DNA from: Asterias rubens
Lineage: Eukaryota
Assembly: GCF_902459465.1 (NCBI RefSeq)
Contig: NC_047076.1
Coordinates: 8,184,001-8,248,000, forward strand
Direction: 5' to 3'
DNA: 64,000 bases
Shown: positions 11,001 to 52,000 of the stretch, piece after piece
Layout of the letters: every line of letters starts with the position of its first letter
Numbering within the stretch: the first letter of the stretch is position 1
The notes under the pieces: model-generated
The model's database searches: none
Told to the model about the DNA's origin: nothing
The model's input: only the letters and a program-made list of their open reading frames with translations
Program-made: the position numbers and the translations under genes

Positions 11001-14000
11001 CTTGTAGACCCTCACAACTTGAATCCCCTACGAGGGGGTATGATAGATGGGTCAGTCTAATGATTCAAGCGTTCTGCATACCTGTTGATTAAATAACGAG
11101 TACTATGAAGTGCCAATGGACTTAGTGCTATATAAAACTCAGATTTGTTATTACAGTAAGTTGAGTCACTTTTGAATTTACGCCTTGAAAACAAAAGGTT
11201 TGGTTTTCAAGTGTTTTCCAAAACAATGCATTTGCGCACAAATGTATAGCTGTTTCATTAAAGGCAGTGGACAGTTAGCATAAAACCTTACTTGGTGACG
11301 AGTTATGGGGAGAGGTTGATAGTATAAAACATTGTGAGAAACGGCACCCTCTGAAGTGACATAGTTTTCGAGAAAGAAGTAATTTTCCACGAATTTGATT
11401 TTGAGACCTCAGATTTAAAACTTGAGGTCTCGAAATCAACCATCTAAACACACACAACTTCGTGTGACAAGGGTGTTTTTTCTGTCATTATTATCTCGCA
11501 AGTTCAATGACCGATTGAGCTCAAATTTTCACAGATTGTATGCATATGTTGAGATACACCAAGTGAGAAGGCTAGTCTTTGACAATTACCAATAGTGTCC
11601 ACTGCCTTTAATAACGTTTTCAGATTACTCCATTGAATTTGAAATTCTTTTTGTATTCCAAGCAGTTATGACCTATCTAGCCTATTAAAAAAAAAAGAAT
11701 TTAGATTATGTGTTTTTTAAAGTTTCTTTTTCTTTTGCATTTTTTGTTCACAAACTTATAATTTATTTTATGATTAGTTTTTGTCACTGGACTATGTGGT
11801 AAGACCTCTGTTATAAATGTTTTCCGTACTATAAACACTTAACATTAATGTTATAATCAAAAGAATGGGGTCCTAAGCCTTGTATGACTGACTTTGGCGA
11901 TGGCATGGTCGTGGGCTGAAGTGGCAGTTGTTGGTAAAACAGGAGCCTTTGACCGTTGACCCGCCATGAACAACTTTGCAAATACTGGGAATTTGTGCAT
12001 TAGCTGGTCAAACCAAGAAAGAGAAAACAAGATGATGTCTGTCTGTAGCCAATATTGCTCATCAGGCCGGTATATATACAGTTTCCTGGGTGTTAGACGA
12101 CTGAGAAAACTTGTATTCCCCTTGACAGGATGCCAGTCTATTCCAGGTTACTTCCCAGCTCTTGCCAGAATACATAATTTGTACGTCTGGTTGGAGAGAA
12201 GCAATTTGGATAAAGTGTCTTGCTCAAGGACACAAGTGTCGCAACTGACCAGGCTGGGACTCGAACCCATACTTTGTAAAATACAGAACTTGAGTTCACC
12301 GCCATAGACCGCTCGGCCACAAAACTCTATGTTTGCTGGTCTAGTTAGTTAGCAACAAAGTTTTGTCTCTTACTACACAAGCGTGCACATTTACGGCTAG
12401 TGTGCCCATCCCCATTTTTTGTGAAGTTGTCTCTCAGTCAAGGCCTATTAGTTCCCACATTCAACCATGGCCCAGGGTGTATTAGACCTGTATATAATAC
12501 GAGGTACCATTTATGTTTTGTTCTCTGTGTCAAATAACAATAAATAAACCCCAATTCTCATAGCATGAATACTATGACCTGACTGTTTAAAAAGACACTA
12601 GACACCTATGGTAATTTTCAAAGACCAGTCTTCTCACTTGGTGTATCTCAAAATATATGCATGAAATAACCAATCTGTGAAAACTTGAACTCTATTGATC
12701 GTCGAACTTGGGAGAGAACAATTGAAGAAAAAACACCGCACAAGTTGTGTGCTTTCAGATGCCTTGAATTCGATACTCAAATTCAATTCAAATATATTAA
12801 TTAGAAGTTACTTCTTTAAAGAAAACTAGTAAACTATGTTACTTCAGATGGAGCCGTTTCTCACAATGTTTGAGACTATCAACAGCTCTCCATCGCTAGT
12901 TATGTTACCATGTAAGTTTTTATGCTAACAATTATTTTAAAGAATTACCAATAGTGTCCAGTGCCTTTAACCTCTCAGCCTCATTTTGATTTATACATTA
13001 GTTTGAGTCTGAAGAGAAAAACAAAACAAACCTGTACCTGGATAAAATGTCAATTTGAGAATTCTACAATAACAATCATGATAACATATTTTTGCTTGTA
13101 CCACAACATTTCTGTAACAAATTTCTGGCTAAGGGGCCACTCAGGTTATAAAGGATGATGTATACATAAGGTTTTCATGAAGGGAGTGGACACTATTGGA
13201 AATTACTCAAAATAATTTTTAGTATAAAACCCCACTTGGTAACGAGTAATGGAGAACTGTTGATAGTCAGGGATGAGATTGTTCAGACTTTTGGCTGAAT
13301 TCAGACTTTTTATGTCGGCCGGGTGAAGAAAATCAGACAATATTTTTTTCCAGAAATAAAGAAATCCTGCTCATCATCCTCATTGAGTATTGACATTGGT
13401 CTAATCTCTCTAGTAGTGCTTTGGAAACTGTTTGTGTTTCCAAAAGCTCCTTGAAGTTGAATTCTATAACACCCATGCAGGGTTTACCAAACAGTAGAAA
13501 TGGCATCATTTCAACAGTACTTTTGAATTTGTGTCCAAGCTTCTGCCTTTTTCGTCAGCCCTGGATAGTATAAAACATTGTGAGAAATACCTCCCTCAAA
13601 AGTGACATAGTTTTCTAGAAAGAATTAATTTTCCACGAATTTGATTTCAAGACCTCAGAATTAATTTTTGAGGTCTCAAAATTAAGCATCTGAAAGCACA
13701 CAACTTTGTGTGACAAGGTTTTTTTTGTTTTTGTTTTTCCCATTCATATCTTGCAACTCCGACGACCGATTGAGCTCAAATTTTCACAGGTTTGTTATTT
13801 TATGCATATGTTGAGATACACCAACTGGGAAGACTGGTCTTTGACCATTTAAATTGTATATCAAAAACATTTGTTTGCAATTTTCTTTTAAATATTTCCC
13901 ATCGTTAAACAACACAGGGTTACTGCTGTTTGTGATAACTAGAGGGAAATGTCGAGATAAGCCTAGCAAACACATAAAAAACACATTAAAATTAAATGCA

Positions 14001-17000: not shown

Positions 17001-20000
17001 TTATGTTCTCTTATGGGTCACAATGCTATAAGTTTTGTTGTTGTAATATTAACCCCACCCCTCCCCCCTTCAAAATCCAACTCCATGTCTGTTTGATTAT
17101 GTTGGATTGTATAGAGCTAGGACCTTCCTCTATGGTTAGATTGAGCGCCATGATCTAGATGGAATGGCGCTATATACAAATCTGGTTTTTATTATTAGAT
17201 TCAGGACTATGCTAATGAACATATTATGCTTTAGAAATAGAAAACACCCTCCAGGGAACTTGAGTATTGTGCAGGATTGGTAAGAAGAGAAAAAATAGTC
17301 CCTGAACCTCAACCTTTGATCCGTGTGGAAAGTTTTGATTAAATATATACCATGAATGTAAAAGCCATCAATCCAAATTGCTCACACACATCGGTGTATG
17401 GGTAAAAACCAAAATTAATATTCTTTATCCCCGATGCAAATTTAACATATTATATCGTTGCGGTACCCTCTGCCAAAACATAGGATTCGAACTGCCTCTA
17501 GCTGCCGGGCAATCTCGGTAGTCTAGTTGGTAAGACACTGCTCTAGAATTACAAGGGTCGTGGGTTCGAATCCCACCCGAGTAACTACCTGTGATATTTT
17601 TTCACAGGACTCGGGAAAGTACTGAGTATACAGTGCTAACACACATTGGTGTATGGGTAAAAACCAAAATTAATATTCTTTATCCCCGATGCAAATTTAA
17701 CATATATTAAATCCAAATTGCATTGACTGTTTTATGCTTTTTTGTACATGGTACATATCTATGTTTGCAAGCCTCGTAATGTCATATTTGAGGGGGCAAG
17801 GCCATTTTCATTTTGAAAACGGTACTTCCATTGGAAAACCTTTTAAGTCTATGGGAAGCTTTTGAAGGGACACGGCACCAACGCCAAGACCAGGGCAACA
17901 GGCTCTGTGGCATCCATGAAACTCCATGCTAATGTATCTATTTATTTATCTGACTGGTCTCGTTTGTCAGTCTGTCCTTGCCCAGTCCAAGTCTTGTCTG
18001 TCCAGTCAGGAAAAAACTTTAAAGCACTAATGATGTTTAAATTTGTCTACAAATTGGGTGTAGTTTAATTTTTTTTCTAACTGGTTGTTATAAAGTAACA
18101 AGGTTCTACTTTATTTCTCTTTCTCTCTCTTTTAAGCAAGCCTCGTAATGTCATATTTGAGGGGGCAAGGCTATTTTCATTTTGAAAACGGTACTTCCAT
18201 TGGAAAACCTTTTAAGTTTATGGGAAGCTTTTGAAGGGACACGACACCAACACCAAGACCAGGGCAACAGGCTCTGTGGCGTCCATGAAACTCCATGCTA
18301 ATGTATCGATTTATTTATCTGACTGGTCTCATTTGTCAGTCTGTCCTTGCCCAGTCCAAGTCTTGTCTGTCCAGTCAGGGGAAACTTTAAAGCACCATGC
18401 TGCAGTGAATTAAAATAAAACAGTTAATTTTGCTGTCATTTATTTCTGATATATGTATTGAACATCAATAAAATGTGTTTTTTTTCCTCGACATATCTCA
18501 CTTGCGTAATTAGCGAATAAGTCATGCAACGGCTCGGGTTCCCTACATGATGTCACATTAAGGCTCCCTTTTAGGGGCGGGGTGGGTTCCCCTAATCTCT
18601 TGAAAACCACTTTTAAAATACTTGCGCATTAAATAAAAAAATTTAAAAAATATTTCAGGTTTAAAAAGTCATGTTTAATCGTTTAAATAAAAAAAATAAA
18701 AAACACTGCAGCCACCCTTTAAAGCACTATGCTTCACATTTCCCCTGCATATTGTTAAAAACAGTAACAGAGTATCTTAACCATGTAATAATGATGTTTC
18801 AACTGATGTTGTAGTCTGTTTGTAATGCTTAAAGGCATTGTACACGTTTGGTAATTACTCAAAATATTAATCGGTCAGCATAAAACTTTACTTGGTATTG
18901 AGCAATGGAGAGCTGTTGATAGTATTAAACATTGTGAGAAATGACTCCCTCGGAAGTAACTTAGTTTTTAGAAAGGTCATTTCTCACTAAAATTATAAAA
19001 GACTTCTGGCCAGAAGCCTTTTATTCCTATCTGAAAGCACACTATTTTGTACAACAAGGGTGTTTTTTTCTTTCATAATTTTCCTGCAACTTCAATGAGG
19101 AATTGAGCCCAAATTTTCACAGGTTTGTTATTTTAAATGCATATGTTGGGAAACAACAAGTGAGAATACTGGTCTTTGACAATTACCAAACGCGTTCAGT
19201 GCCTTTAAATTACATTATTTGGATACATTTGTTTGTTGTTGCCAATGTTGGAATAAATGTCTAAACTATACCAGCATGTGTTTGAGAATTCTGCTTCAGG
19301 GTTTAGTTGTTTTATTGATCGCTTCGTATTTAATTATTTGAATCTCAACTATTCATATTTTTTTTGCAGGTTTACCATATGCCATGAAGAAGGCCGGTCT
19401 ACCCCTGGGAATTATACTTATTCTGCTAATAGCTGGTGTCACAGGTAGGACAAATAATGAGCAAGTTATAACAAATTGGAGAAATGTGGGACCTGGCAGA
19501 GTTGAACAGTGCCAAAGTTTAGTCTCAATGGTTTAATTATGCATGGCCAGATTTTTGCCTAACATTTTTTTTAAAAGAATTTGTTCTTAGAGAAAATATT
19601 TTGCAGATGATGTTGTTTCAAAATGAAGAACATACAAAAACTATCGCTTGTATATGCCACGGACAATGCACAAAATTTACATATAGCAGTCACAGATAAT
19701 TGAGTAAATGGGTACCTGCGAGGGTAGAGATTGTTGCTGTGAATGACTAGCAACTGATGATAGTCGGTGCTGCATACTCATAAGGAGTTTGAGTTGGTTC
19801 TAGGGGTATGTTCAGACAGCGTACTAAGTTAGACCCGAACCGGTTTAAATTTTTGAGCAGCAGGGGGTGGTCGAAAAAATAAAATCCCCTTGCGTTCAGA
19901 CAGCACTGAGTTAAACCCGATACGGTTAATGTTTGACTTTAAGAGGTCAAAACAAACGCAACCCCGACACTCTAACATCCTGTTTATTGGCCCGTTCATT

Positions 20001-23000
20001 GGTCACCGTGTGTTTACATAATGATTACGGAGGTCAATGGGTCGTCTGTTGTGAGTTAAACCGGATGTGGTCTTTTTTATTCTGTCCACACACAGTGTTA
20101 AAAGATATACCCAAAGCGGTCTAAAGATAAACCCCCTCCCTGGACGGTTTATCTTTTGTGGGTTTAACTCGATTCGGACTAACTTTAAAACTGTTCAGAC
20201 ACACAGAGTTGAACTCGATCGGGTTGAACCATGAGTTAAACCAACTTTAGTACTGTGTCTGAACGACCTCTAGGAAGGCTTAGTGCCTAATAAACAGGGG
20301 TTAAAATCGTGTGAAGGAACTCTGAGAGGATGGCAGTCACTTTGTAACTCTGCTGCTTCGTACCTTTGAGTCACTTTGTTCCTTGGTGCAAAGTTTGTCA
20401 GTTTGTAATGTCAACCGAGTCACTAAGTGTCATATAAGAAGGTGTGAATTGTCGTGTGTACGAAGTGTCCAAAGTCACTTCGTACCTTGGTAAAATTTGG
20501 CATTCATAAATACCTAAGACAGTTTCGCTTTTCCTATGGGTGGAGAGCGCGTCATTTTGCGGGTGTTTAAACCTTAAATAATGACCAGTATAAAAAGTGT
20601 TGAAACACGGGCGTGACATTCCTATTGGTCGAGAGTAACGGCCGGGACAGTTGTGCCACATCACGCGATACGCGCGTCGCGCACAGCAATCTCCAGCTGC
20701 AGGGGTGTTGTGTTGAAAGAAATAATTGAACGATATAATTTTTGCATTTATTTTCCTATTTTCCCAGATTATTCTCTTCTTCTGTTGATCCGTGGTGGTG
20801 AGCTCTCTGGAACCACCACTTACCAGGATCTCGTCCAGGCCACTCTTGGAATACCTGGTTTCTACTTTCTCTCTTTCATCCAGTTCTGTTATCCGTTTGT
20901 GGGTGAGTAACTTCAGAACTTAACTTCACTCTTTAACAAATAATAATAATAATAATGAACAAATTTTTTTCAAAAGCGCTTTTGAAAAGTGAAAAAAGGC
21001 AACCAGGAATGCAAAAGATTTTTTTTGACGGAAAATACAGAAAGAAATACAAACTGCATACAAAGAAAGATACAAAAAGATGTGTCTTCAAATTAGACTT
21101 GAGCTAGTCTAGAGAGGAGCTAACTTTTATTGAATTCCAGAGTTCAGGAGATGCAACCTGAAAAGCGTTTTGCCTGTAAGCTTATGTGGTTGCTGGAAAA
21201 GGAGTGAGAAGTTGTCAGTTTTTCTTTGTCAAAGAACTTCCTTTGGCTGAGGAAGTTGTAAAGTTGTCCAAGAAGAAAACAAGGCATCAAGGCCAAAAAC
21301 AATGGCAATGTGTAAGTGCCATTAGTTGAGTGGAGGTCTGGTATTTGGTTTATATTTGTATAGAAACTGTGTAATTTAACTTTATTTTTGCCCTGTTGGT
21401 ATAAAATAACAAAGTTCTACTTAATTTCTCTCTCTCTCTTTTAAGCGATGATCGGCTACAATGTGATCATTGGTGACACAATCACGAAGGTGTTCGAGCG
21501 ATTATTGAGCGGTGAGTAACATAACTCATACCTTAGTGATAAATCATTGGACCAAGACAGTACCAAAGTATTCAAGCGAAGCTCAGCATTGGATTGTAGG
21601 TAAACTAATGTTTCAACTGCTTTTACTTTTCAGATGACCATGTTCTTGCGAACCGGTACTTTATCATCAGCATCATCACGGTGCTGATTTCTCTTCCCTT
21701 CTCGCTGTATCGCAATGTCTCCAAACTTGTTAAGGTATGCTTCTTATAAAAATTTAAAATAAATGTCTGCAAAACTTATTTTTTTTAATTAATGTCTTTG
21801 TTCATTTTGAACGAAAACACCAAGTGTAGGATACCATTGGATTGCTCTTGTCTTACTGAATTTAAAAATATCCAACACGCCCAATTTTGTGAAGAAAAAT
21901 TATTTTGCTAATTTATCGAAAGAAATATTAAAATTTATTCCTATATGTCTCTTGCAGGTGGCCATAGTATCTATTGTACTTCTTGTAGTGCTCATCATAA
22001 TAATGTACATCAGGGTCGGAACTCTACACATGTAAGTATGTCAGTTCTGATGGAATCATAAATCTGTATGACCACAAGAGGGTGCCCTACATGTATAGTA
22101 TATACTTTTCAGCGGCAGAACATGAATCGACGTCAAGTAAATTGTAAACATCTTTTACTTTTTGTTTTGCCAGTCCGCCCACGGATGGTGCGTGGAACTT
22201 TGCTAACTTCCAGTTCACTGAGTCTATTGGGATCATTACATTTGGTAAGTATATTTTGTTTGTGAAATTTCCTTCTTAGTGTGGGTGCGGTGAACCGATG
22301 ACCTACAATAATAAAAGGGACAATGGGGTCCCTTGTGTAGTGAAGGTCCTCAGACTTGGAAAGTGTGCACTAAAACAGTGGTAGCTGTTGCTTAAAAGTT
22401 AGTACTAACAAAAAGGGGCCACTAGGACCCAACTGACACAATACAATGTTACAGAATTGGATTAGATGAAAACGTTTTGAATATTTAACATGAGGTGTTC
22501 CTATTTTCATCACGTTGTATTTGGGTATTGTAAAAAAATTAGTATGAAGTTGTGACAACATAGTTATAAAACTTCATCACATGTTGTGACCATTATGTTG
22601 TAAATGTTGTAGGCCTACTTAAGTTTTATAACAGCGTAGTATCTTTTTTTTCCATTACAATTCGGATTATATTACCAAGTATAACGGATTATATTACCAA
22701 GCATATTTGAGTATCGGTAACTTATTCATTTATAGACCATCTTGTTGAATAGTTCAAACAGCTGGTGGGGATGGGTTTACAATCATTATTAGCAAACAAC
22801 TATTGTATTTTTTTTTTTTTTTACGCCGGGTCACTATATGGAACAGGGTTTTCATTCCCGACCTGATTGCAAGGGTTTCCATTGGAATATTTCTCTTAGG
22901 TTTCCCTCCCTCCCTTATCTATAAAACTGAAACTTCCTTCCTTGTCTTCTCTCCATTGGGTTCTGGCTATTGTATACTGATTAAGTTTGCCTTTTTGAGA

Positions 23001-26000
23001 GTCCTTGACTTACATTCAGCATGAATTAAAACAAAGTCACTTGCAATTTAAAGGTTGTGGGTTCGAATCCCCACAGCCAACCTTTGGTTTCCTTATGACT
23101 AGAATAAGTATTGCCGTCTTGTTACTGATTCACAATTTGTTCAATTCATAATCATTTACGTTAAAGGCAGTGACAACTATTGGTAATTACTCAAAATAAT
23201 TATTAGCATAAAACCTTTCTTGGTGATGAGTAATGGGGAGAGGTTGATGGTATAAAACATTGTGAGAAACGGCTCCCTCTGAAGTGCTATAGTTTTCGAG
23301 AAAGAAGTAATTTTCCATGAATTTGATTTCGAGACCTCAAATTTAGAACTTGAAGTCTCGAAATCAACCATCTAAACGCACACAACTTCGTGTGACATGG
23401 GTGTTTTTTTCTTTCATTATTATCTCGCAAGTTCGATGACCGATTGAGCTCAAATTTTCACAGGTTTGTTATTTTATGCATATGTTGAGATACCCCAACT
23501 GTGAAGGCTAGTCTTTGACAATTACCAATAGTGTCCACTGCCTTTAAACCAATAATGGTGTGAGAGAGAGATTGGCTGTTGGCAGCTTTGTGTCTATCGA
23601 TCTTCACGGAAAGATCATCTTAAAAAAATAAAATAAAATGAAATAAGCCTTTTTGAGGTATGACGGACGTGATAGGAGTGTACTGTTTGGTTTTGGGTGT
23701 ATTCAGACAAATTTACGCAAACCATTTGGTGTTGTAGTATTGTGTCCGCCATATCTCAAAAAGGCTTATTGGAGGCACTCGTATTTTGCTTTTTGTCTCA
23801 TCGGAATGATGATTTCAGCTTGACATGACAATTTGATTTATTCTTTATCATCTCTCCACCTCAGCCTATATCTGCCACCATAATTCCTTCTTGGTCTACA
23901 CATCCCTGGAGACACCAGACTCACACAACTGGTCAAAGGTCACACACTCGGCCGTCGTCATGGCAACCTTTCTCTCCATCTTAGTTGGCTTGGGTGGCTT
24001 CATCACCTTCACTGGTTACACCCAAGGTACAATTCCATCAATCGTGATTTTACAAATTCCTAAAAGTTTTATATTATAATAAAGTCCAGAGGCCAGCTAT
24101 GCGTGAGATTTTTCAAAGCTCACCACCGCCCCCCCCCCCCCTGCCTGTTGTGTCTTCGCTAGTGGAGCGCATTTAACAAATTTGCTAAACGAATCGGGAA
24201 AAACTTGTGCGCAATGAGCGTTTTGCGCTCTGCCGAATTTTAGCTGAACCTGCTGGGAGAGCAAAAGCGTGCGCAATCTTCAAATTTGCCCCCTGTTTGT
24301 ACGGCAGCTCAAGTTGATGATTTTGATAAACTGTGTGCAATCTGAAGATTGTGCACACTTTGTAGATTGTGTTTTTGTACACACGAGCGCGATTTGGCAA
24401 TGTATTGTCGTTATTTTTTTTATTTTTCTCGGTCTGGCCCCAATGCGTGAGAAAACGGTTGCTGTGCGTGTGAGCGTGAGACAGAGCCCAAATGTGTGAG
24501 TCTCACGCCTAATGCGTGAGACTTGGTAGGTCTGTAATTCCTTGACACAAACATTGTTTTAATTTTACATACAACCCCATGCTGTGTAGGCGCTCTCAAA
24601 TATTTTTTCAAAGACAATATCAACCTCTACCTTCGCATTTACACATTTATACCCTACATGTTAGTAAAGTAATTTTAGTGAGGTGTCTTGCTCCAGGATA
24701 AAGCCTCATGACCAGGATTTGAACCCAATCCCTAAAGACTAAAGCCCGGGTCATACTTCCTGCCAATGCGATGCGATACAAATGTTGACGTTACAAATTC
24801 ACAACGAAATTCGCACTGAGTTCAGTTGAGCTCAACTCTCTTGCGAATATCTCAGCGAAAGAGGAGTTGTGACGTCAAATTCACATCAAATTCGCTTCGC
24901 ATTCGCATTCGCAAGAAGTATGAACCGGGCTTTAACCACACGAACTTAAATGGTCTAAACCCCTCACCCACTCCACCCCTTGGGGTTTGTTACTTGATGT
25001 TGATATTTTTGGGAAACTTTTTCTTCAAAAGGTGACGTTCTGCAGAATTACTGCCACACTGATGATCTGGCCAATGTCGGACGGGTTGTGTTTGCTGTCA
25101 CCATCGTCTGCACCTACCCATTGGAGTGCTTTGTGTGCAGAGAGGTGAGTTATAAATGGCTTCAACATACGAACCTCTACTCCCTACTAATCCCCTTTAT
25201 AGCCTTCAAGCAAAACATTTTTTTCTGTATAATCTGATTTCTGCCTGTTTTTTCTCCCTTAAAACCTCCTTTAGCCTTTAAAAAAAAAAAAAAAAGTAAA
25301 CCAATCACCAAAGAGAGATAAAAAAACCAATGGTCTCTAAATTAGTAGTTTTATATTTCTGGTGGAGCACAGTGTCTGTAAATTCCTGAAATAGAACACC
25401 TTATTATATATAATGTTATAAGAGGGACCCAGAAGTCATTTTCAGGATTATTCACATTCTTCCATACTCAGCAAATGAGTCATATTTCTATGTAGAAGCC
25501 TATATTTTTTTGTTGAGGCTGTTCCCTTCGCCCAGTTTATCCCATGTTATCCCTACAAAATGCTATCTTTCATAATACCTACATCAATTAGAATCAAACA
25601 GGGCATGCCTAAATAAGGCTGTACTTTACGCCAAATTCATAAATCCTCAGACAGTTTCGCTATTCCTATTGGTGGAGAGCGCGTCACGTGGGTGTGTATA
25701 AACCTTTGTTTATGACATGTAAAAAGTGTTGAAACATGGGCGTGACACGCGAGCTTGCACCTGTTCTGTTAAGACAGTTTCTTTATTCCTATTGGTCGAG
25801 AGCAACGGGTGGAGGGGTGTTGTGTTGAAAGAAATCATTGAACAATTATAATTTTTGCATTTATTTTACATTTTGACCAAAAAGTGTCCGATGTTTTTGA
25901 CCGAAAAGGTATTTATGAATGGGAATCAAAGTGTGTTGAATCGGTTTTCAACTAGAGGTTTAAACCCGCCGAGGCCTGGTTCTTGATAATTTACCTCGAC

Positions 26001-43000: not shown

Positions 43001-46000
43001 GATGGGTTATTGCAGTGATGAATTCCGAGACCCAATTATTTAGCACCTTATAAGGGTTTACAAGGGTTTACAAGGGGCTACGGCACATTAAGCAGCCACA
43101 ACCAGGAACACCAGGGCGAACCCCTTCTCTTTTCGATAAGTGCACTGGGTTCTTTTACATGCGTTACACAACACATGGGACCAACGGCTTTACGTCCCAT
43201 CCGAAGGACGAAGCAATGGTTAAGTGTCTTGCTCAAGGACACAGTGTCACGGCTGGGGATTCGAACCCCCCACTCAGCTGATCAGAAACTCCAGAGTTTG
43301 ATTGATGCTGAAGAAATTGTCTTTAGTACATTCATTTCGGTCCTAACTGTTTAATAAAAGTGATCTATAAGGCGCTCTTAAACTTTGTGTCAAAGCACCT
43401 TTACACTCTTACTACTACTAAGAATAACAGTAACACTTAACCAACATTTATAAAGCGCACAAAGCAACGACGTCAAAGTGCTGTTAACAGATATTAAAAA
43501 TCTTAAGCAATACTAGACAATTTAAAAATATTATAAGCTACACACAATAAAATGTAAAACAACAGTGGATGAACAATAAATATTATTAAGTACCAAAATG
43601 ATGATTGACAATACACCATCAAGTCGTTCATTTGCCCCTTCAGCACTCCTGAAACCATATCAACTCCTTTAAAGTATGCAGCACCAGCAGCCAAATTTGC
43701 GCACAGCTTGCTAATTATTCACATCAACAATTTCTATCCTCAAAGATGATGAGAAGCAATGATAATAAAGAGTTTTTTACCCCCACCCCCCCCCCCAAAA
43801 AAGTAAGTGTCACAGCCAGGATTTAAATTCCACACTCTGATGACTGGGCTGTTAGAACTTGAGTCAGACTCTAAACACCTCAGCCATGACAAGCTACAAA
43901 TTGTTTTGGGCCTTCAACCCCAGTACCAAAGATAAACATTTGGTAAGCACTGACAAATCTTGCTTAACAGAAAAGGGTTTCCAGCCAAAATGCTGCTTGA
44001 TTTAAACTGTTGTGACTAGCCCCCACCAACTCAGCGAAGAGATTTTTCAGCAGATACTTTCTGCTTTAAGAGTTTTTTTTAAAGTTGGGCCTAGCTTGTG
44101 AATTGTTCCTGCTAACCAAGCTTTTTCCCAGTGCTTAGCGTGTTTCTGCTCTGAACTTACTTCAAGCTCTCAGGGTAGTCCAGCGTGTCTGTGGTTGCAA
44201 AGGTAGCGTTCCAGAACACCAGAGTGTGGTTCTTAACGGCACGCTTTGAATGCATCAAGCCAACCTCTAGCAGGGAGGAAACGACGGTGAGAAACGCAGA
44301 GTCGTAAAGCCCATTGTAACGAGTCTGGATTGAGGTCAAGAGGTCAATCCAAAGCTTTTCTAACTTCTGCCACGTCGACGTCGGGTAGGAAGTTGATTTT
44401 AGAGGTCTGAAAAACAAAATTATCAATTGTGTAAATCCTTGTCATCATCAACTGATTACTAATGAAACTAAATCCTTTAATAAAAATAATTTTGGCACAC
44501 TATCATTGAGCTGATGGACGGCAAATTTTGAATGACTTTGATAATTTATTTGCGAAGAAAAATCAGAAGGGCACCAGTGACAATTACTTCAGATGCATAG
44601 CCTTTTGGCTGGCAACCCATTTTAACTAACCAAGCCCAGGTCGAAATTCCAGTTGAACCTAGTTAAACTGGGTTTAACTGGAACTAGTTGAAACCAGTTG
44701 ATAAACTAGTTAAACACAGTTAAAACCAGTTGGTTTAATATGGAAAATGGACAGAGACCAACTGGTTTATAATTTCAACCTAGTTGAACACAGTTAAACC
44801 TAGTCCAAACCAGTTGGTTAATATGGAAAATGTACGAGTTTGATCACTATCCAGTTGAACCAGTTGACCCCAGTTAACTAGGTTCAACTGGAATTTTGAC
44901 CTGGGAGTGTTTTCTTCTCCAAGAACAATATAGTTTCGTTTCGTTACAATGCAAGAAATGTATATTCAGGGGACCAGTTATAGCTGGTCCCATACCTACA
45001 ACTGTACATGTTGCATACCAACGCAGGAAACTCCTGCTCAAGGAACCAGTGATTGTTTTCACTGGTTCCCGATTCAGTGTGCAGATTACTGTAGCATGCA
45101 TTTTCCCACCTAAGTGGCACAAGATTAAAGCCACTTAGAGTCTACTAAGCATGCGGAATATATATCAGTAAATTTTACTCAAAACGAAAATAAACCATTT
45201 TAGCTAAGCAAGTTTTTTTGTTGAAACAAAAGTTGAAACAAAGGATTCTTTTCAAAACCACCCCAACTCATTTTTAGAGATAGTCATTACATGGTGTTAC
45301 TTCAAACCTTTCCATATTGTACTTCCACCATGCAAAGTTTCAAATCCTATTTACCAAACAACTTGATGAAGTTGTGCATCAATGTTTACAAAACAAACAA
45401 ATATTCGACTTACCCTGTGCTGTTGTAGAAACCAGAGATATGCGTAGCGAGTTTGTCCAGCAGAACGGCCATGATGGAGGGCTGGGATACATTGGTGAAG
45501 AGTGTGCTGAAAATGCTTGCCATTGTGCCAACTGTTGTGAAGGACTCCTGGGACGTGGAGGACTGCAAAGGTGGAAGTTGATTGATGGATGGAATTTATT
45601 TGGGATGAAAATACAGCAAGAAAATTAACAGTAACATTTATTTCAATGCTGTTATACAACACATAAATACAATAATGTAAATTTATGTCGAAATTAAGCT
45701 TGGGCGATATCACGATATTATCGACCATCGCGATACTAACTTGGAAACGATTTTGATATCGGATCGATTTGGTTTTTATCAGAATATCGATATATCGTGA
45801 TATATTGATTAAATATCGCAATATCGGCAATATATCGTGAATAAAATAAATCGATATCGCCCAAGCTTAGTCGAAATGGTAAAAACTTAGATGAAATGCT
45901 TATTGAGAGTAAATAAAAGTAAGTATACAAATTCACTTCTCAGACAACAACTAGTTTTGGCTCGTTACAATGGAAGAACCTTATGTTCAGGGCACCTGTC

Positions 46001-49000
46001 TTAACCGGTCCCATATCTACGATTGTAGCATACCAATGCAGGAAAACCTTGGTCAAGGAAACAGCAGATCTTTTCACTGGTTCCAGTTCAGTATGCTGTT
46101 TACTGTAGCATGAATTTTCCCACCTAAGTGGCACAAGATTGAAGCCACTTAGGGTCTATTAGCATGCAAAAATAAATATTTGTGAATGTTCTCAAAATGA
46201 AAATAACCTGATTAACCGAAACAACACGGGACACTACATGAAGTTTACTTGGACTAAGTACAAGCAAAAAGGAAAGAACCATCCAAAAAACATGCCCCTA
46301 CAAACAGATATGTCAAATTTAAGATTAAGAAGGCGGAAAAGGGAAGGAGAAGGGGGGTACGAAAAGACCGAGGTTTAGAAAATAAGCACTGGGTCAAAAA
46401 CAGGGATTCAAAACAAACAAATATCACATTAAACAAAAACTAAAACCATAACAAAACGAGCAGTCGAAACAGCAACTGGTTGACAAATTAAAACATATAA
46501 AAGAATTCTTTTCAAAAGGAAAGAATTTGGACAAGTTGAATTAAAATTGAATCAAGATTTGTTTGATTTATTTTCATGTTAAAGATTGACAGAGTAATCA
46601 GACAAAAGAACTTACTTGTAAAAGTCCAGCGAACTTTGATAGCTCCGCCTTCAGCTGGCGCTGGTTCTCTTCAGTTACCTTGGCAACCAGCTTGATTATT
46701 GCCGTAAGGTTACCAAGGGGTCGAACCCGTCCACGGCCACCTCCAGGGGTGTGGGCGTTTGGGAAGGTCGTGTTGCCAGTAAAAGAAGAGAAGTCAAAGT
46801 TGTTGAAGATTACTTGAAGGAGTTGAGCGAGACAGTCAACACACAACGGCGAGTTCTGAAAGATCGAAAGAAAAAGCTATAAAACTCCTGAAACTGTTCA
46901 CTTCAGGCATGCAACTGCCCGATGAAAAAAAAAGAGGAAACTTTTCGAGACCCACAATGGTACCCTAAAAAGTGTTGAGGTTTTTTATGCTCTTAGGATC
47001 AGTCTTAGCATGTATGACAAAGACAAAGTGAAGTGTTTTATACAACTAAAATAACATGGAAAAACACCTTGCCTATGTATGCACCGTAATTCTAAGGTGG
47101 CAAAGCATCGGGAGTTGATTAAGTTGAGGAAAACTAACTATTGTTTCCCAGGTAATTATGAAATTTGCATAAAATTATTATTCCCCCCCCCCCAAAAAAA
47201 GAAAAAAATCAGATTTTTTTTTTTTTTTTTTGGGGGGGGGGAATAATAATTTTATGCAAATTTCATAACTACCTGGGAAACAATAGTTAGTTTTCCTCAA
47301 CTTAATCAACTGCCGATGCTTTGCCGCCTTACAATGTTCGGTGAGAGCCACTTGTTCCCGCTTGCCGTCTTGCACATCACACAATATGCCATTCCTGGCT
47401 TGTCCACTTTCCGGACGGTTTCGGCGAGCAGTTTACCGTCGACATCTTTTTTTTCCAACCAGAACCACTTCCAGGTATTTTTTACTCCTTTATCAATGGC
47501 TTTAATTTGGCCAGGTACCACTCGGTCCCGCTCTAAAATATCATTTCTTTTGGATGTCATTTTGACGGACGTTTGAAGATACGACTGTTCACAACTAGCA
47601 CACAGTATACATGTACATTTAGCAACTAACTCACACACACACATACACATGTACATGTACAACACGTGTATACTATACTATTGCAAAACAGCGGGACCAG
47701 ACGAAGACACGACCTTAGACTCATTTCAAGGCTGTTTAGCACACAACTCGCCTGCGCCACGGGTGCGTTCCACTGTTCCAGATTTTTCGACCGTACACAC
47801 GGCTATTAGTGACCACACGCAGTGTGTAAACGTACGCTTTGCTTGCTGTGGGCTTTAGATTGACCCTGCAGTAGAATGGATTGCGTGCCGCGGCAGAGGC
47901 CAGACCATGCGTTACAATGTATTGTTGAATTTATCTTTAGATCGCGCTAACCGCGGAATGTATTTTGGATATTTTTTTAGCGCTAATCATTTGTCTTATT
48001 ATCGCGCTAACCGCGGAATGTATTTTTTTGCGCTAATAATTTTTTTAAAAACGCGTTTCCGCGGAAGAGTTGCATGCCTGTCACTTGCTTGCTCAAGTAT
48101 TGTGTTAAATCAAAAAAGATAACTGGTCCAAAAACAAATAATGGTGATTAAAGGCAGTGGACACTATTGGTAATTGTCAAAGACTAGCCTTCACAGTTGG
48201 TGTATCTCAACATATGCATAAAATAACAAACCTGTGAAAAATTGAGCTCAATCGGTCATCGAAGTTGCGAGATAAAATGAAAGAAAAATAACCCTTGTCA
48301 AATAAAGTTGTGTGCGTTTAGATGGTTGATTTCGAGACCTCAAGTTCTAAATCTGAGGTCTTGAAATCAAATTCGTGGAAAATTACTTCTTTCTCGAAAA
48401 ATATGGCACTTCAGAGGGAGCCGTTTCTCACAATGTTTTATACCATCAACCTCTCCCCATTACTCGTCACCAAGAAAAGTTTTATGCAAATAATTATTTT
48501 GAGTAATTACCTATAATGTCCACTGCCTTGAAGTCATGAAACGTTAATCAATTTGTTGAAGACTCGGACACAAATTCCACAAATAACATTAAATTTAACT
48601 TGTCATTTTTATTTTGTGACATGCATTCAGAGAGTACCAGTGACTGTCAAACACTGGTCCCATGTTCTGCATATATGTATATGTTAATGTAGCATACATT
48701 TTCCCACCTAAGTGACACAAAATGGCTGCCACTTAAGGTCTACAAGTATGCCGATCTTTACATTTTGCCCCAAAACTCTAAACTCTCTAAACATGCCACA
48801 CCATTTGGTGGTGGTTGGTTGCAAAATTTGTACATGATGTCCAAAACCAATTAATTATGTTGTCTATAGCCCCTGTTATACACTAGAAGAATTGTATGGA
48901 CAAATATTGGGTGACTTCATCACTTTGGTGGCAGCAGTGGGATTGTGCTTGAAAATCTCCCTATGACCCAAAAGTAACTCTAGAAATAACACATACCAGT

Positions 49001-52000
49001 GGTGTACTTTCTAAACATGATACAATCTTTGTGCAAAGCTCTTCACAACCAAGGTTTGAGTCAGCAGTGGTTACCACTGCGGCACAGCGGGCAAAGGCCT
49101 GGTATAATTCCGCCCAGGTTTTCAGAAGCGTTTTGGTCGTCATCTGAAATGAAATAAGAACAAAAGTGTTATACAAAATTTCTGAAACAATAAAATACAA
49201 AGGGAACTCGGAAAGAAGAACATCACTTTTTGTGTTTGGTTTACCTGTGGCAGGGTACCAGTTTCACTGAGTAACAGGCGTTGAATTGGGAGCATAAGAC
49301 TGGCATACATCGTGCTGAAGTCATGGTCCAACGAATCACCCTGGTTCACTTCATTGGTCTGTCAATACAATCAGAGATGGTAACCGGTGAACAAATAGAA
49401 GAAACAAATTTGGCGCAACTCTTTTAAGCGGAGAATTGTGACTGTACGATGTGCCCAGCCTTCAAACGTGCTCTCAAAACCCACCCTTTTCCCTCTTCGT
49501 AGCTGGTCGTCTTTATCTTTGTTCTGTCTTCCCCCCTTCTTTCTCAGCGCCTTGTATCCTTTGGCAATTTGGCGCTATATAAATACTGTTATTATTATTA
49601 TTAAGGTAAGCAAAACCATGAAATTTCGCCTTGCAAATATAAAATTAAACATCATTGCAGAGTGGTTAGGAGCAGCGAATTCAAGTCATCAGAGTGTGGG
49701 TTTGAATCCCCGTCATGACACTTGTGTCCTAGAGCAAGATGCACTACTATAATTCCCTTTCTTCACCCAGGGGGATAAATGTGAACCAACAAGGGTAGAG
49801 GTTGATATTGTGTATAAAAAGCCTTTGAAGCGCTAGCTACGGTTGCTTAGGTTGTATCTCCAGGGAGCTGAGAAAGATAAAAGGAATGTTGTTGGCATTG
49901 AGACGGTTATTGTGAAATTCACTATATAAGAACTTCTTATTATTACCTCAATAATATGGCCGAGTAGTGGATACACAATACAACTCCAGATTCTCCAGAG
50001 CAGCTCTTTATTGCCGAGGTCAGACGCCGCCTTGTCGACGAGATTAAAGACGGAGCCCGCAAACCCAAGAACGGTTCCCGGCACGGTCAATCCACAGTCG
50101 ATTAATGTCTCAAGCACGCAGAAAAACCTTAAGGATAACAAAAACAAACCAACGGTTTTTAAACTATTGAAAGAGGTAGACCAAGTAGACACAGTGCTGC
50201 TAAAAATTGTACTCTTGGAACAACAACAATTCTTGTCAAGAAAAATGTTGTGCGACTCGCACCAAAATTGATAGAAATCTTTTGAGGGGGCGACCAAAGA
50301 TTTGTTGTCCTGGAACAAGCCATTTTAGCGGTGCTGTTCATTAAAACAAACACAAAATAAAACATTACAAATTTCTCACTTACTATAGATTAGCACTCAG
50401 CACTAATACTAAAAATAGAGGCCAAGTACCCGAATAAACGATAGCTGGTCCAAATATCGCAAATAAGTGACTAACAATTGGGCTGAATATACAGACAGAA
50501 ATTGAACAATTACAATTAAATTTAACTTGCCATTATTATTTTGTGACATGCTTTCAGAGAGTACCAGTGACTGCCAACACTGGTCCCATGTTCTGCATGC
50601 ATGTATAAGTTATTGTAGCATACATTTTCCCACCTAAGTGACACAAAATGGCTGCCACTTAAGGTCTACAAGTATGCCGATCTTTACATTTTCCCTCAAA
50701 ACAACTGTTTTTCGGAGGAGCTGGGTTACCTTTCGTCAGTCGCTCTGACTAACATGCCTGGACTAAGCAGCAGTTCGATGAGAAATAACGCTGGTGTTCC
50801 CTGAAAGTAACAATTTGTTCACATTTATTTCAGTTGGGGGTTGAACAAAGAAAAACTTACTGCATAGGGTGTAAAACCTGTGACCTACTACTAACGAACT
50901 GGTGCCTTACCAACCAACTAACCCAGTCAGAAGACGATCAACCTGTTACTGCTGTATAGCCAAGGATCACACCCATGTTTACGACACAATTACTAGGGAC
51001 GCAGTAGGAGAGGGAACACCCCCTCCCCCTAAGGTGTTCCCTGTGACTTCAGGTATTTAGTAATAAACCTCAAGGGAAAGTGACTGGGTAGAATTTAGTT
51101 TAACTTGTGTAAACACGCCACATCATTTGGTGGTTGGTTGCAAAAATGTCTGTGAAGTCAAAACCAAATAACTATGCTGTATATAATAGCCCCTTTTAAC
51201 ACTAGCCATTTGCCTGGGAAATATTTTGCAAATCCATCACTTCGGTGGCAGAGTTAAATTTCTTGTCCTAAATTCATGTAAAGGGAGCTTTCTTTTCCCC
51301 AAAAAAGAATGTGGGAGAGCACTGAGTACAAAATAAACCGAGTATAAAACATTACAAAATATTATCACAAGATTTGAACTTACGTGGAGCAGTCCAGCAT
51401 TTCCAGTGTGATACGACGACGAACCTAATACATTCTTTGGCAGATTGCTGACGGCCTCCAGAAATTTCTGCGTTAAAAAAAAACACACCAAAAGAACGTC
51501 AGGATATATTTTACGTTCAAATACATCACTGGTGACTAAATGATTTCAAAAATGCTTCAACAAAATTTGCTTTGCTAAAAAAACCATCAGATACAAATAG
51601 CTTCTGGTTGGTTCCTGCTCTTTCCAAAAAAAAAAAACCAATTGAATATTTGTCTTTGGGACTTAAAGGAACACGTTGCCTTGGATCGGACGAGTTGGTC
51701 TTTTAAAAGCGTTTGAAACCGTTTGTTATGAAATGCATATGGTTAGAAAGATGTTTTAAAAGTAGAATACAATGATCCACACAAATAGGCCTCGAAATTG
51801 CGTGGTTTTCCTTTTACGTCGCGAACTATCACGGTCGGCCATTTATGGGAGTCAAAATTTCGACTCCCATAAATGGCCGACCGTGTTAGTCGACAGGGTA
51901 AAAAGAAAACCACGCAATTTCGAGGCATATTTGTGTAGATCATTGTATTCTACTTTTACAATATATTTCTAACCATTTTACAATAAACGGTTACAGAACG

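What the first reader, a model, noticed from the sequence alone, without database searches (positions are those of the whole stretch)
44935..50678. Family of four H/ACA snoRNA-like RNAs hosted in four RIF1 introns, with compensatory base changes
Seen in sequence: four sense-oriented segments (45006-45155, 46021-46168, 48612-48752, 50539-50678) share a 5' hairpin. Its lower stem changes compensatorily (GCATGC/GCATGC in copy A, GCATAC/GTATGC in C and D). Its upper stem varies by a G-C to G-U wobble (TAAGTGGC/GCCACTTA vs /GTCACTTA). The internal-loop strands TAGAC and GGTGGGAAAAT are invariant. Each hairpin is followed by an ANANNA H box whose N positions vary (ACAGTA, ACAGTA, ACATTA, ACAATA), then a second hairpin and ACA. 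Established knowledge: this hairpin-hinge-hairpin-ACA layout at ~140 nt in host introns defines H/ACA pseudouridylation guides. Inference: RIF1 is a snoRNA host here and the family expanded by intron-to-intron duplication. I could not assign a known family or target by eye, so it may be unannotated.
Basis: partly seen in the sequence, partly recalled or inferred. Interest (0 to 1): 0.85.

Follow-up and report, generated by a model that had tools for sequence, protein, structure and literature searches.

The report
Starfish SNORA58-like snoRNAs in RIF1 introns
Four introns of a starfish RIF1 gene each carry a real, conserved H/ACA guide RNA, a distant and unannotated relative of vertebrate SNORA58, which most likely directs one well-known pseudouridine in large-subunit rRNA; this is solid but ordinary biology.

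Summary
There are exactly four sense-strand units of about 145 nt, each in a different intron of a minus-strand RIF1 orthologue: 45006-45156, 46021-46169, 48612-48753 and 50539-50679. Each has a hairpin, an ANANNA box, a second hairpin and an ACA.

Rfam's SNORA58 model (RF00418) matches all four over its full length at 35-45 bits. That is below the curated cut-off of 75, but about 20 bits above any other H/ACA family.

The 5' pocket (GUAGA and GGGA) pairs best with the LSU rRNA site UCCC-U-A-UCUAC. The vertebrate SNORA58 pocket picks this same site, and only this one (human 28S-Psi3823).

The orthologous RIF1 genes of Acanthaster planci (one copy) and Patiria miniata (two copies) carry the same element on the sense strand, while the surrounding intron sequence no longer aligns. 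The basal stem of the 3' hairpin has compensatory changes at 4 of 10 pairs. RIF1 of a sea cucumber and of an acorn worm carries none.

The extra third hairpin after copies A and B is a decayed tandem duplicate.

Verdict: genuine SNORA58-like pseudouridylation guides in a different host gene from vertebrates (UBAP2L), with copy number and intron position changing among starfish. This is a new member of a known kind. Other first-reader notes report similar per-intron snoRNA arrays elsewhere in this genome.

The parts
45006..45156 (-). Copy A, an H/ACA unit in the intron between exons 45568-45413 and 44399-44160. Lower stem 45154-45149 / 45099-45094, H box ACAGUA 45092-45087, ACA 45011-45009. The guide pairs 7+4 bp with the LSU site.
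   Evidence: SNORA58 37.5 bits; MFE -59.8, z -5.5; 11 bp, no G.U
46021..46169 (-). Copy B, in the intron between exons 46840-46610 and 45568-45413. This is the same intron position as the single A. planci copy. H box 46106-46101, ACA 46026-46024. It is the most eroded copy: C.U in the lower stem, GUAGA changed to AUAGA (4+4 bp only), and a mismatch in the 3' upper stem.
   Evidence: (34.9 bits)
48612..48753 (-). Copy C, in the intron between exons 49146-48997 and 46840-46610. H box ACAUUA 48690-48685, ACA 48617-48615. It has the short form of the 3' hairpin. The guide pairs 5+4 bp.
   Evidence: (43.3 bits)
50539..50679 (-). Copy D, in the intron between exons 50806-50729 and 50129-49944. It starts about 50 nt after the splice donor. 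H box ACAAUA 50616-50611, ACA 50544-50542. It is 95% identical to C.
   Evidence: (45.3 bits)
44925..45005 (-). Third-hairpin segment downstream of copy A. It is a tandem partial duplicate of the 3' hairpin plus tail, and probably not part of the mature RNA.
   Evidence: The counterpart after B (45945-46020) has a broken stem and no ACA, and A. planci lacks the hairpin.
44160..50806 (-). Part of the host gene, a RIF1 orthologue. Exons mapped at 50806-50729, 50129-49944, 49361-49242, 49146-48997, 46840-46610, 45568-45413 and 44399-44160.
   Evidence: tblastn with A. planci RIF1-like; GT/AG junctions; Rif1_N

Best explanation
The four units are intron-encoded box H/ACA snoRNA genes, paralogues of one family. 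I infer that they are released from spliced RIF1 introns by exonucleolytic trimming and assembled with dyskerin, NHP2, NOP10 and GAR1.

The pocket of the 5' hairpin has GUAGA on its 5' strand and GGGA on its 3' strand. It sits 15-16 nt upstream of the H box. It pairs with the universally conserved LSU rRNA sequence UCCC-U-A-UCUAC and so places that U for conversion to pseudouridine. This is the site guided by vertebrate SNORA58/ACA58 (human 28S-Psi3823). I infer that it is also the site guided by yeast snR9 (25S-Psi2340).

The 3' hairpin has no recognisable rRNA target. It probably serves only as the second structural and protein-binding module that carries the ACA box.

The family is a distant homologue of SNORA58. 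In starfish it lives in RIF1 rather than UBAP2L, and it has multiplied and moved between RIF1 introns by DNA-level duplication. Copies A, C and D look intact. Copy B looks partly decayed.
For: - **Class features:** Hairpin-hinge-hairpin-tail folds. The H box keeps A at positions 1, 3 and 6 in all 7 copies from 3 species while the N positions vary. An ACA follows the 3' basal stem directly in all copies.
- **Family:** RF00418 SNORA58 is the top Rfam hit for every copy, over the full model length (1-136).
  - Window copies score 35-45 bits, with E 9e-7 to 1.6e-4.
  - A. planci scores 42.8 bits. Patiria scores 50.5 and 54 bits.
  - The next H/ACA families score 18-21 bits.
  - The lower stem GCAUAC/GUAUGC is identical to the vertebrate consensus. 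The CCAG...CUGG of the 3' upper stem is also shared.
- **Target:** I tested 354 conserved U contexts in 20 complete eukaryotic rDNA units.
  - The best site for copy A is CCACUGUCCC-UA-UCUACUAU (7+4 bp, no G.U). C/D reach 5+4 and B 4+4, each tied with other sites.
  - For the A. planci and Patiria pockets this is the only site found (5+6 bp). The same holds for the Rfam vertebrate consensus pocket (5+8 bp).
  - The site lies inside LSU_rRNA_eukarya.
  - The literature gives ACA58/SNORA58B as 28S-Psi3823, 5+9 nt, 5' hairpin, host UBAP2L (PMC1636440). At least 8 bp suffice for guiding (PMC6049503).
- **Selection:**
  - Over 7 kb compared with A. planci, only the exons and the snoRNA units still align.
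  - The 5' hairpin is 96% paired in 7 sequences, against 20-45% in slid controls.
  - The 3' basal stem is 92% paired, with 4 of 10 pairs changed on both sides.
Against: - **No RNA-level evidence:** There is none for expression, RNA ends, dyskerin binding or the pseudouridine itself.
- **Threshold not met:** The Rfam score is well below the gathering threshold. Extrapolated to a whole genome, the E-values would not be significant.
- **Weak 3' guide strand:** In the window species it pairs only 4 bp (GGGA) before an A.G mismatch. The invariant AAAAU is therefore unexplained.
- **Chance matches:** A shuffled guide reaches 11 bp somewhere in conserved rRNA in 3 of 60 trials, and 9 bp in about a third.
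- **Borrowed rRNA:** The species' own 28S was not available. 11 of 124 motif occurrences in the environmental rDNA loci have C instead of U at the position that pairs with the last A of GUAGA.
- **Few sequences:** Covariation counts rest on 5-7 related sequences.
Confidence: 0.75

Rival explanations
1. The units are genuine H/ACA snoRNAs but not homologues of SNORA58. Under this reading the resemblance is convergence imposed by guiding the same rRNA site, or they now guide another target, as the Xenopus SNORA58-like RNA switched to 18S-324.
For: - Scores of 35-54 bits are below the gathering score of 75.
- Much of the matched sequence is the guide itself.
- Target switching by point mutation is documented in this very family (PMC6984369).
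- The window lineage changed two positions of the 3' guide strand relative to Valvatida starfish.
- C/D tie with a second site, UUUCCC-UC-AGG, at 6+3 bp.
Against: - Non-guide parts also match the vertebrate consensus: the lower stem is identical, and the 3' upper stem and loop share motifs.
- The match covers the model end to end in all 7 copies.
- The Psi3823-type site is the best or the only conserved site for every pocket.
Confidence: 0.15
2. The units are decaying relics, that is, snoRNA pseudogenes or retrocopies that are no longer processed or functional.
For: Copy B has a lower-stem mismatch, a guide mutation and a non-canonical MFE fold. The segments after A and B are clearly decayed duplicates. 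Patiria copies have weak 3' upper stems, with z-scores of -1.6 and -2.3.
Against: - Boxes, pocket and basal stems are kept across three species while the surrounding intron sequence has diverged beyond alignment.
- The 3' basal stem shows compensatory changes.
- There are no poly(A) tails or target-site duplications, and the duplicated blocks include upstream flank.
Confidence: 0.07
3. The units are copies of a mobile element (MITE or SINE) that happens to fold like an H/ACA RNA.
For: The copies are multiple and dispersed, with short shared flanks. These introns do contain real MITE-like insertions (45690-45870, 47106-47319, 48140-48530).
Against: - There are only four copies in 64 kb, all sense to the host.
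- No terminal inverted repeats or target-site duplications were found.
- In two other starfish the element is again found only in sense inside RIF1.
- Genome-wide copy number could not be measured here.
Confidence: 0.03

Closest known systems
Vertebrate SNORA58 / ACA58 (Rfam RF00418), guide for human 28S-Psi3823
   Same: - About 136-150 nt with two hairpins.
- Identical 5' lower stem GCAUAC/GUAUGC.
- The pocket strands carry GUAGA and GGGA.
- Same predicted LSU target, guided from the 5' hairpin.
- The pocket is 15-16 nt from the H box.
- The 3' hairpin has no known rRNA target.
- Intronic and sense to the host gene.
   Different: - Scores 35-54 bits against a gathering score of 75.
- The 3' guide strand is shortened from 8-9 bp to 4-6 bp.
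- The host gene is RIF1, not UBAP2L (PMC3511168, PMC6984369, PMC1636440).
- There are 1-4 copies per host gene, in changing introns.
- The 3' hairpin of A, B and the Valvatida copies carries an extra small stem on its 3' side.
Yeast snR9, guide for 25S-Psi2340
   Same: By my own offset calculation from memory, not tested here, it guides the equivalent LSU position. snR9 to Psi2340 itself is documented (PMC5699541).
   Different: It is an independently transcribed yeast gene. No sequence comparison was made here.
Multi-copy intronic snoRNA arrays (my recollection, not checked here: Xenopus U17 in the introns of a ribosomal protein gene; U14 in hsc70 introns)
   Same: The same snoRNA family is repeated, one copy per intron, in one host gene. 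Other first-reader notes report the same pattern in this genome (SF3B3, ATP5F1B, RPS8, LARP1, unchecked).
   Different: Here the host is RIF1, a gene with no link to translation or ribosome biogenesis. The occupied introns differ between related species.

Membership tests
box H/ACA snoRNA (class) | Hairpin-hinge-hairpin-tail secondary structure | tested here: met
   MFE folds. Paired cells 96% (5' hairpin) and 92% (3' basal stem), against 20-47% in slid controls.
box H/ACA snoRNA (class) | H box ANANNA in the hinge | tested here: met
   ACAGUA, ACAGUA, ACAUUA, ACAAUA, ACAUGA, AAAAUA and AAAGUA. A1, A3 and A6 are invariant while the N positions vary.
box H/ACA snoRNA (class) | ACA box 3 nt from the mature 3' end | tested here: inconclusive
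   An ACA directly follows the 3' basal stem in all 7 copies. The mature 3' end cannot be known without RNA data.
box H/ACA snoRNA (class) | Pseudouridylation pocket about 14-16 nt upstream of the H or ACA box | tested here: met
   In the 5' hairpin there are 15-16 nt between the base of the upper stem and the H box (counted). The pocket of the 3' hairpin is poorly defined in A and B, with about 30 nt to the ACA.
box H/ACA snoRNA (class) | Stable expressed RNA bound by dyskerin/NHP2/NOP10/GAR1 | not testable with these tools
   No expression or immunoprecipitation data are available.
SNORA58 (Rfam RF00418) | Covariance-model score at or above the curated gathering score (75 bits) | tested here: not met
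   34.9-45.3 bits in the window, 42.8 in A. planci, and 50.5 and 54 in Patiria. All are full-length, top-ranked hits.
SNORA58 (Rfam RF00418) | 5' hairpin pocket complementary to the LSU site of human 28S-Psi3823 | tested here: met
   The best conserved site for every pocket is CCACUGUCCC-UA-UCUACUAU: A 7+4, C/D 5+4, B 4+4, A. planci and Patiria 5+6 bp. It is the same single site as for the vertebrate consensus pocket. The target assignment is from PMC1636440. At least 8 bp are needed (PMC6049503).
SNORA58 (Rfam RF00418) | Host gene UBAP2L (conserved in vertebrates; not a defining feature of the RNA) | tested here: not met
   The host is RIF1 in three starfish.

The most novel reading that the evidence does not exclude
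Inside one host gene the snoRNA is unusually mobile. Three starfish use five different RIF1 introns: four in the window species, one shared with A. planci, and one shared plus one new in Patiria. Each lineage also has its own duplications. The window lineage has weakened one guide strand and, in copy A, lengthened the other. This could reflect an active local intron-to-intron copying mechanism, together with the start of guide diversification or target switching, as seen for the Xenopus SNORA58-like RNA. The alternative is simple birth and death of redundant copies. If the per-intron snoRNA arrays noted elsewhere in this genome are real, the mechanism may be genome-wide in starfish.
Probability: 0.15. 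Interest if true: 0.55.

Novelty: new member of a known kind. Interest (0 to 1): 0.3.

Why it matters
- **Annotation:** It supplies a missing annotation. The guide for a pseudouridine site that the literature places in humans (28S-Psi3823) and, by my unverified offset, in yeast (25S-Psi2340) was not recognisable in echinoderms at Rfam's thresholds. Genome annotation that applies Rfam's gathering score would miss it.
- **Age of the family:** If the homology holds, SNORA58 dates back to at least the deuterostome ancestor. Earlier comparative work traced it only to amniotes, and later to frog and fish (PMC3511168, PMC6984369).
- **Host-gene turnover:** It is a clean example of a change of host gene (UBAP2L versus RIF1) and of snoRNA copies moving between introns of a single gene.
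- **Reusable model:** The covariance model built here could serve to annotate other asteroid genomes.
- **Limit:** None of this changes current understanding of how H/ACA guides work.

Tried and rejected
- **Rfam at gathering thresholds** finds nothing in the region. The family appears only in E-value mode.
The LSU does contain AUUCCCAC just upstream, which pairs 6 bp with UGGGAA. That register leaves 9 unpaired nucleotides before UCUAC, so I rejected it as non-canonical (my reasoning on the sequence).
- **First raw target scan** was swamped by spacer and A/U-rich matches. I then restricted the scan to sites shared by at least 6 of 20 rDNA units.
- **3' hairpin targets.** No conserved rRNA site scores 7 or more for C/D. 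A, B and the third hairpin give only weak, G.U-rich sites.
Rejected as a functional part.
- **Plant miRNA hits** (MIR841 and others at 47106-47319). These are artefacts of a long perfect inverted repeat.
- **Searches that found nothing:** Viral contigs held no rRNA. A look-up of A. planci isoform X2 failed, but isoform X1 worked. No paper links SNORA58 with RIF1, and none describes echinoderm H/ACA snoRNAs of this kind.
- **Duplication order.** The tree of the 7 copies is an unresolved three-way split of (A,B), (C,D) and (A. planci, Patiria). The order of duplication relative to speciation could not be settled.
Full report
**Observation**

- The 5' hairpin has lower stem GCAUGC/GCAUGC in copy A and GCAUAC/GUAUGC in C and D. 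That is one genuine G-C to A-U double change. B has a C.U mismatch.
- The upper stem UAAGUGGC pairs with GCCACUUA in A and B, and with GUCACUUA in C and D.
- UAGAC and GGUGGGAAAAU are invariant.
- The H boxes are ACAGUA, ACAGUA, ACAUUA and ACAAUA.
- A second hairpin and an ACA follow.

The diagnostic 17-mer occurs four times in the window even with three mismatches allowed, against 0.21 expected. A covariance model of the 5' hairpin, run without filters over all 64 kb, finds only these four. Single-sequence folds give hairpin-hinge-hairpin-tail for A, C and D with z-scores of -3.0 to -5.5. B's minimum-free-energy fold is non-canonical (z -4.1). Within the window the covariation is too thin to be significant by itself.

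**Host gene**

The large minus-strand exon finds Acanthaster planci RIF1-like protein, and one exon hits Pfam Rif1_N. tblastn with the A. planci protein lays out a colinear series of minus-strand exons at roughly 55-85% identity. GT/AG junctions are visible at most of them.

The copies lie in four different introns, all in sense:
- D lies between exons 50806-50729 and 50129-49944.
- C lies between 49146-48997 and 46840-46610.
- B lies between 46840-46610 and 45568-45413.
- A lies between 45568-45413 and 44399-44160.

Two introns between D and C carry no copy. The organism is a starfish other than A. planci or Patiria.

**Family**

At gathering thresholds Rfam reports nothing here. In E-value mode all four units match RF00418 SNORA58 over the whole model (1-136), at 34.9-45.3 bits with E-values of 9e-7 to 1.6e-4 in the local searches. 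The next H/ACA families reach only 18-21 bits.

The alignments show that the lower stem GCAUAC/GUAUGC is identical to the vertebrate consensus. The pocket letters GUAGA and GGGA are conserved. The 3' upper stem and loop share CCAG...CAGU...CUGG. The score is far below the curated 75 bits. By Rfam's operational rule these are therefore not members, and they would not stand out in a whole-genome scan. This explains why they are probably unannotated.

**Target**

According to snoSeeker (PMC1636440), ACA58/SNORA58B guides 28S-Psi3823 from its 5' hairpin with 5+9 bp, and its host is UBAP2L.

I fetched 120 environmental eukaryotic rDNA loci containing the conserved LSU motif. One of them was confirmed as a complete SSU-5.8S-LSU unit with the motif inside the LSU. 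I wrote a simple H/ACA target scanner. A first raw pass was dominated by spacer noise. Restricted to the 354 U contexts shared by at least 6 of 20 complete units, the results were as follows:
- The best site for copy A is CCACUGUCCC-UA-UCUACUAU, with 7+4 bp and no wobble.
- The same site scores 5+4 for C/D and 4+4 for B. Both are ties with weaker-looking alternatives.
- For the pockets of the A. planci and Patiria copies it is the only site found (5+6 bp).
- For the vertebrate Rfam consensus pocket it is also the only site found (5+8 bp).

Eight base pairs are the experimentally determined minimum (PMC6049503). The pocket lies 15-16 nt from the H box, as in the vertebrate consensus.

There are weaknesses:
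- A shuffled copy-A guide reaches 11 bp somewhere in 3 of 60 trials. The strength of the argument is therefore the coincidence with the SNORA58 site, not the raw score.
- In the window species the 3' strand pairs only through GGGA.
- The species' own 28S was not available.
- 11 of 124 motif occurrences in the environmental rDNA loci have C rather than U opposite the last A of GUAGA.

No conserved rRNA target was found for the 3' hairpins. This fits the single-pocket use described for SNORA58. Yeast 25S-Psi2340 is guided by snR9 (PMC5699541). Its equivalence to human 3823 is my own inference from numbering offsets.

**Conservation in orthologous genes**

- **A. planci:** The RIF1 locus (L121) contains one copy at 13121-13271 on the sense strand (model R1 64 bits; SNORA58 42.8 bits). 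It sits in the intron after residue about 846, which is the intron that holds window copy B.
- **Patiria miniata:** The RIF1 locus (L122) contains two copies, at 22191-22337 and 23331-23480 (R1 70 and 72 bits; SNORA58 50.5 and 54 bits). One is in the intron that corresponds to window copy A. The other is in a later intron that is empty in the window.
- **Outgroups:** RIF1 of the sea cucumber Holothuria leucospilota (L123) and of the acorn worm Glandiceps (L124) has no such element.

A sensitive blastn of window 44000-51000 against the A. planci locus aligns only the exons and the snoRNA units. The snoRNA units align at 72-79% identity, about the same as the exons. The rest of the introns has diverged beyond recognition.

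Across the seven copies:
- The 5' hairpin is 96% paired, against 20-45% in slid controls.
- The H box keeps its three A's while the N positions vary.
- In the five copies with the long 3' domain, the basal stem next to the ACA is 92% paired. 4 of its 10 pairs changed on both sides, including a C-G, U.G, U-A series.
- The 3' upper stem is less well kept, at 78% paired.

**History**

The duplicated blocks are about 280 nt for A/B (79% identity) and about 210 nt for C/D (92%). They include 23-37 nt upstream of the RNA and 45-90 nt downstream. They have no poly(A) tail and no target-site duplication. This points to DNA-level duplication rather than retroposition of the mature RNA.

A maximum-likelihood tree gives three well-supported groups, (A,B), (C,D) and (A. 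planci,(Patiria 1, Patiria 2)), joined in an unresolved three-way split. The C/D and Patiria duplications are therefore lineage-specific. The A/B versus C/D split may be as old as the divergence of the starfish orders. Copy number and intron position have turned over.

The extra hairpin after A, which another first-reader note called a three-hairpin variant, aligns with the 3' hairpin plus tail as a tandem partial duplicate. It is disrupted and lacks an ACA after B, and the hairpin is absent in A. planci. I regard it as a relic.

**Verdict**

These are real, conserved, intron-encoded H/ACA snoRNAs. They most likely guide the Psi3823-type pseudouridine of LSU rRNA, and they are probably distant homologues of SNORA58 living in a different host gene.
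- **Shown here:** the sequence features, the host gene and introns, the sub-threshold family match, the pocket-target complementarity, the cross-species conservation and the compensatory changes.
- **Inferred:** expression, processing, dyskerin binding, the modification itself and true homology as opposed to convergence.

This is a new member of a known kind. It is useful for annotation and for snoRNA evolution, but not surprising. Other unchecked notes of this scan report similar per-intron snoRNA arrays in SF3B3, LARP1, LONP1, ATP5F1B, TADA2A and RPS8 of the same genome. The pattern therefore seems common in this species.

Noticed in passing
window 47106-47319: A long, nearly perfect inverted repeat with a C-run/A-run and T-run/G-run centre, inside the intron that holds copy C. 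It produces spurious sub-threshold Rfam hits to plant miRNA families (MIR841, MIR9563 and others) on both strands. It looks like a MITE or foldback element.
   Followed up: partly
window 45690-45870: A short element with terminal inverted repeats AAGCTTGGGCGATATC ... GATATCGCCCAAGCTT. It is flanked on both sides by GTCGAAAT, a possible 8-bp target-site duplication. It looks like a MITE insertion in the intron that holds copy B.
   Followed up: no
window 48140-48530: An element that begins AAAGGCAGTGGACACTATTGG and ends with the inverted CCTATAATGTCCACTGCCTT, in the intron of copy C. It looks like another MITE-like repeat.
   Followed up: no
window 17512-17584 (+): The only Rfam hit at gathering threshold in the window is a tRNA (40.9 bits) with mismatches in the acceptor and anticodon stems. 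It is possibly a tRNA-derived repeat or pseudogene. A weak tRNA-like hit (26.6 bits) also lies in an early intron of A. planci RIF1 (L121:2862-2934).
   Followed up: no
window 49640-49790: An intronic stretch with a tRNA B-box-like motif (GGGTTTGAATCCCC). It is probably a tRNA-derived SINE, in the intron between exons 50129-49944 and 49361-49242.
   Followed up: no
window 44930-44960 and 45950-45975; L121 about 13280-13300: A short motif, (C)TTCCATTGTAA or TTGCATTGTAA, is kept downstream of copies A and B and of the A. planci copy, outside the predicted RNA. It resembles the 3' strand of the basal stem and may be what remains of the tandem duplicate. Its function, if any, is unknown.
   Followed up: partly
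L124:14022-14254 (-): A weak antisense SCARNA7-like Rfam hit (25.6 bits against a gathering score of 65, E 0.019) in the RIF1 locus of the acorn worm Glandiceps. It is probably chance.
   Followed up: no
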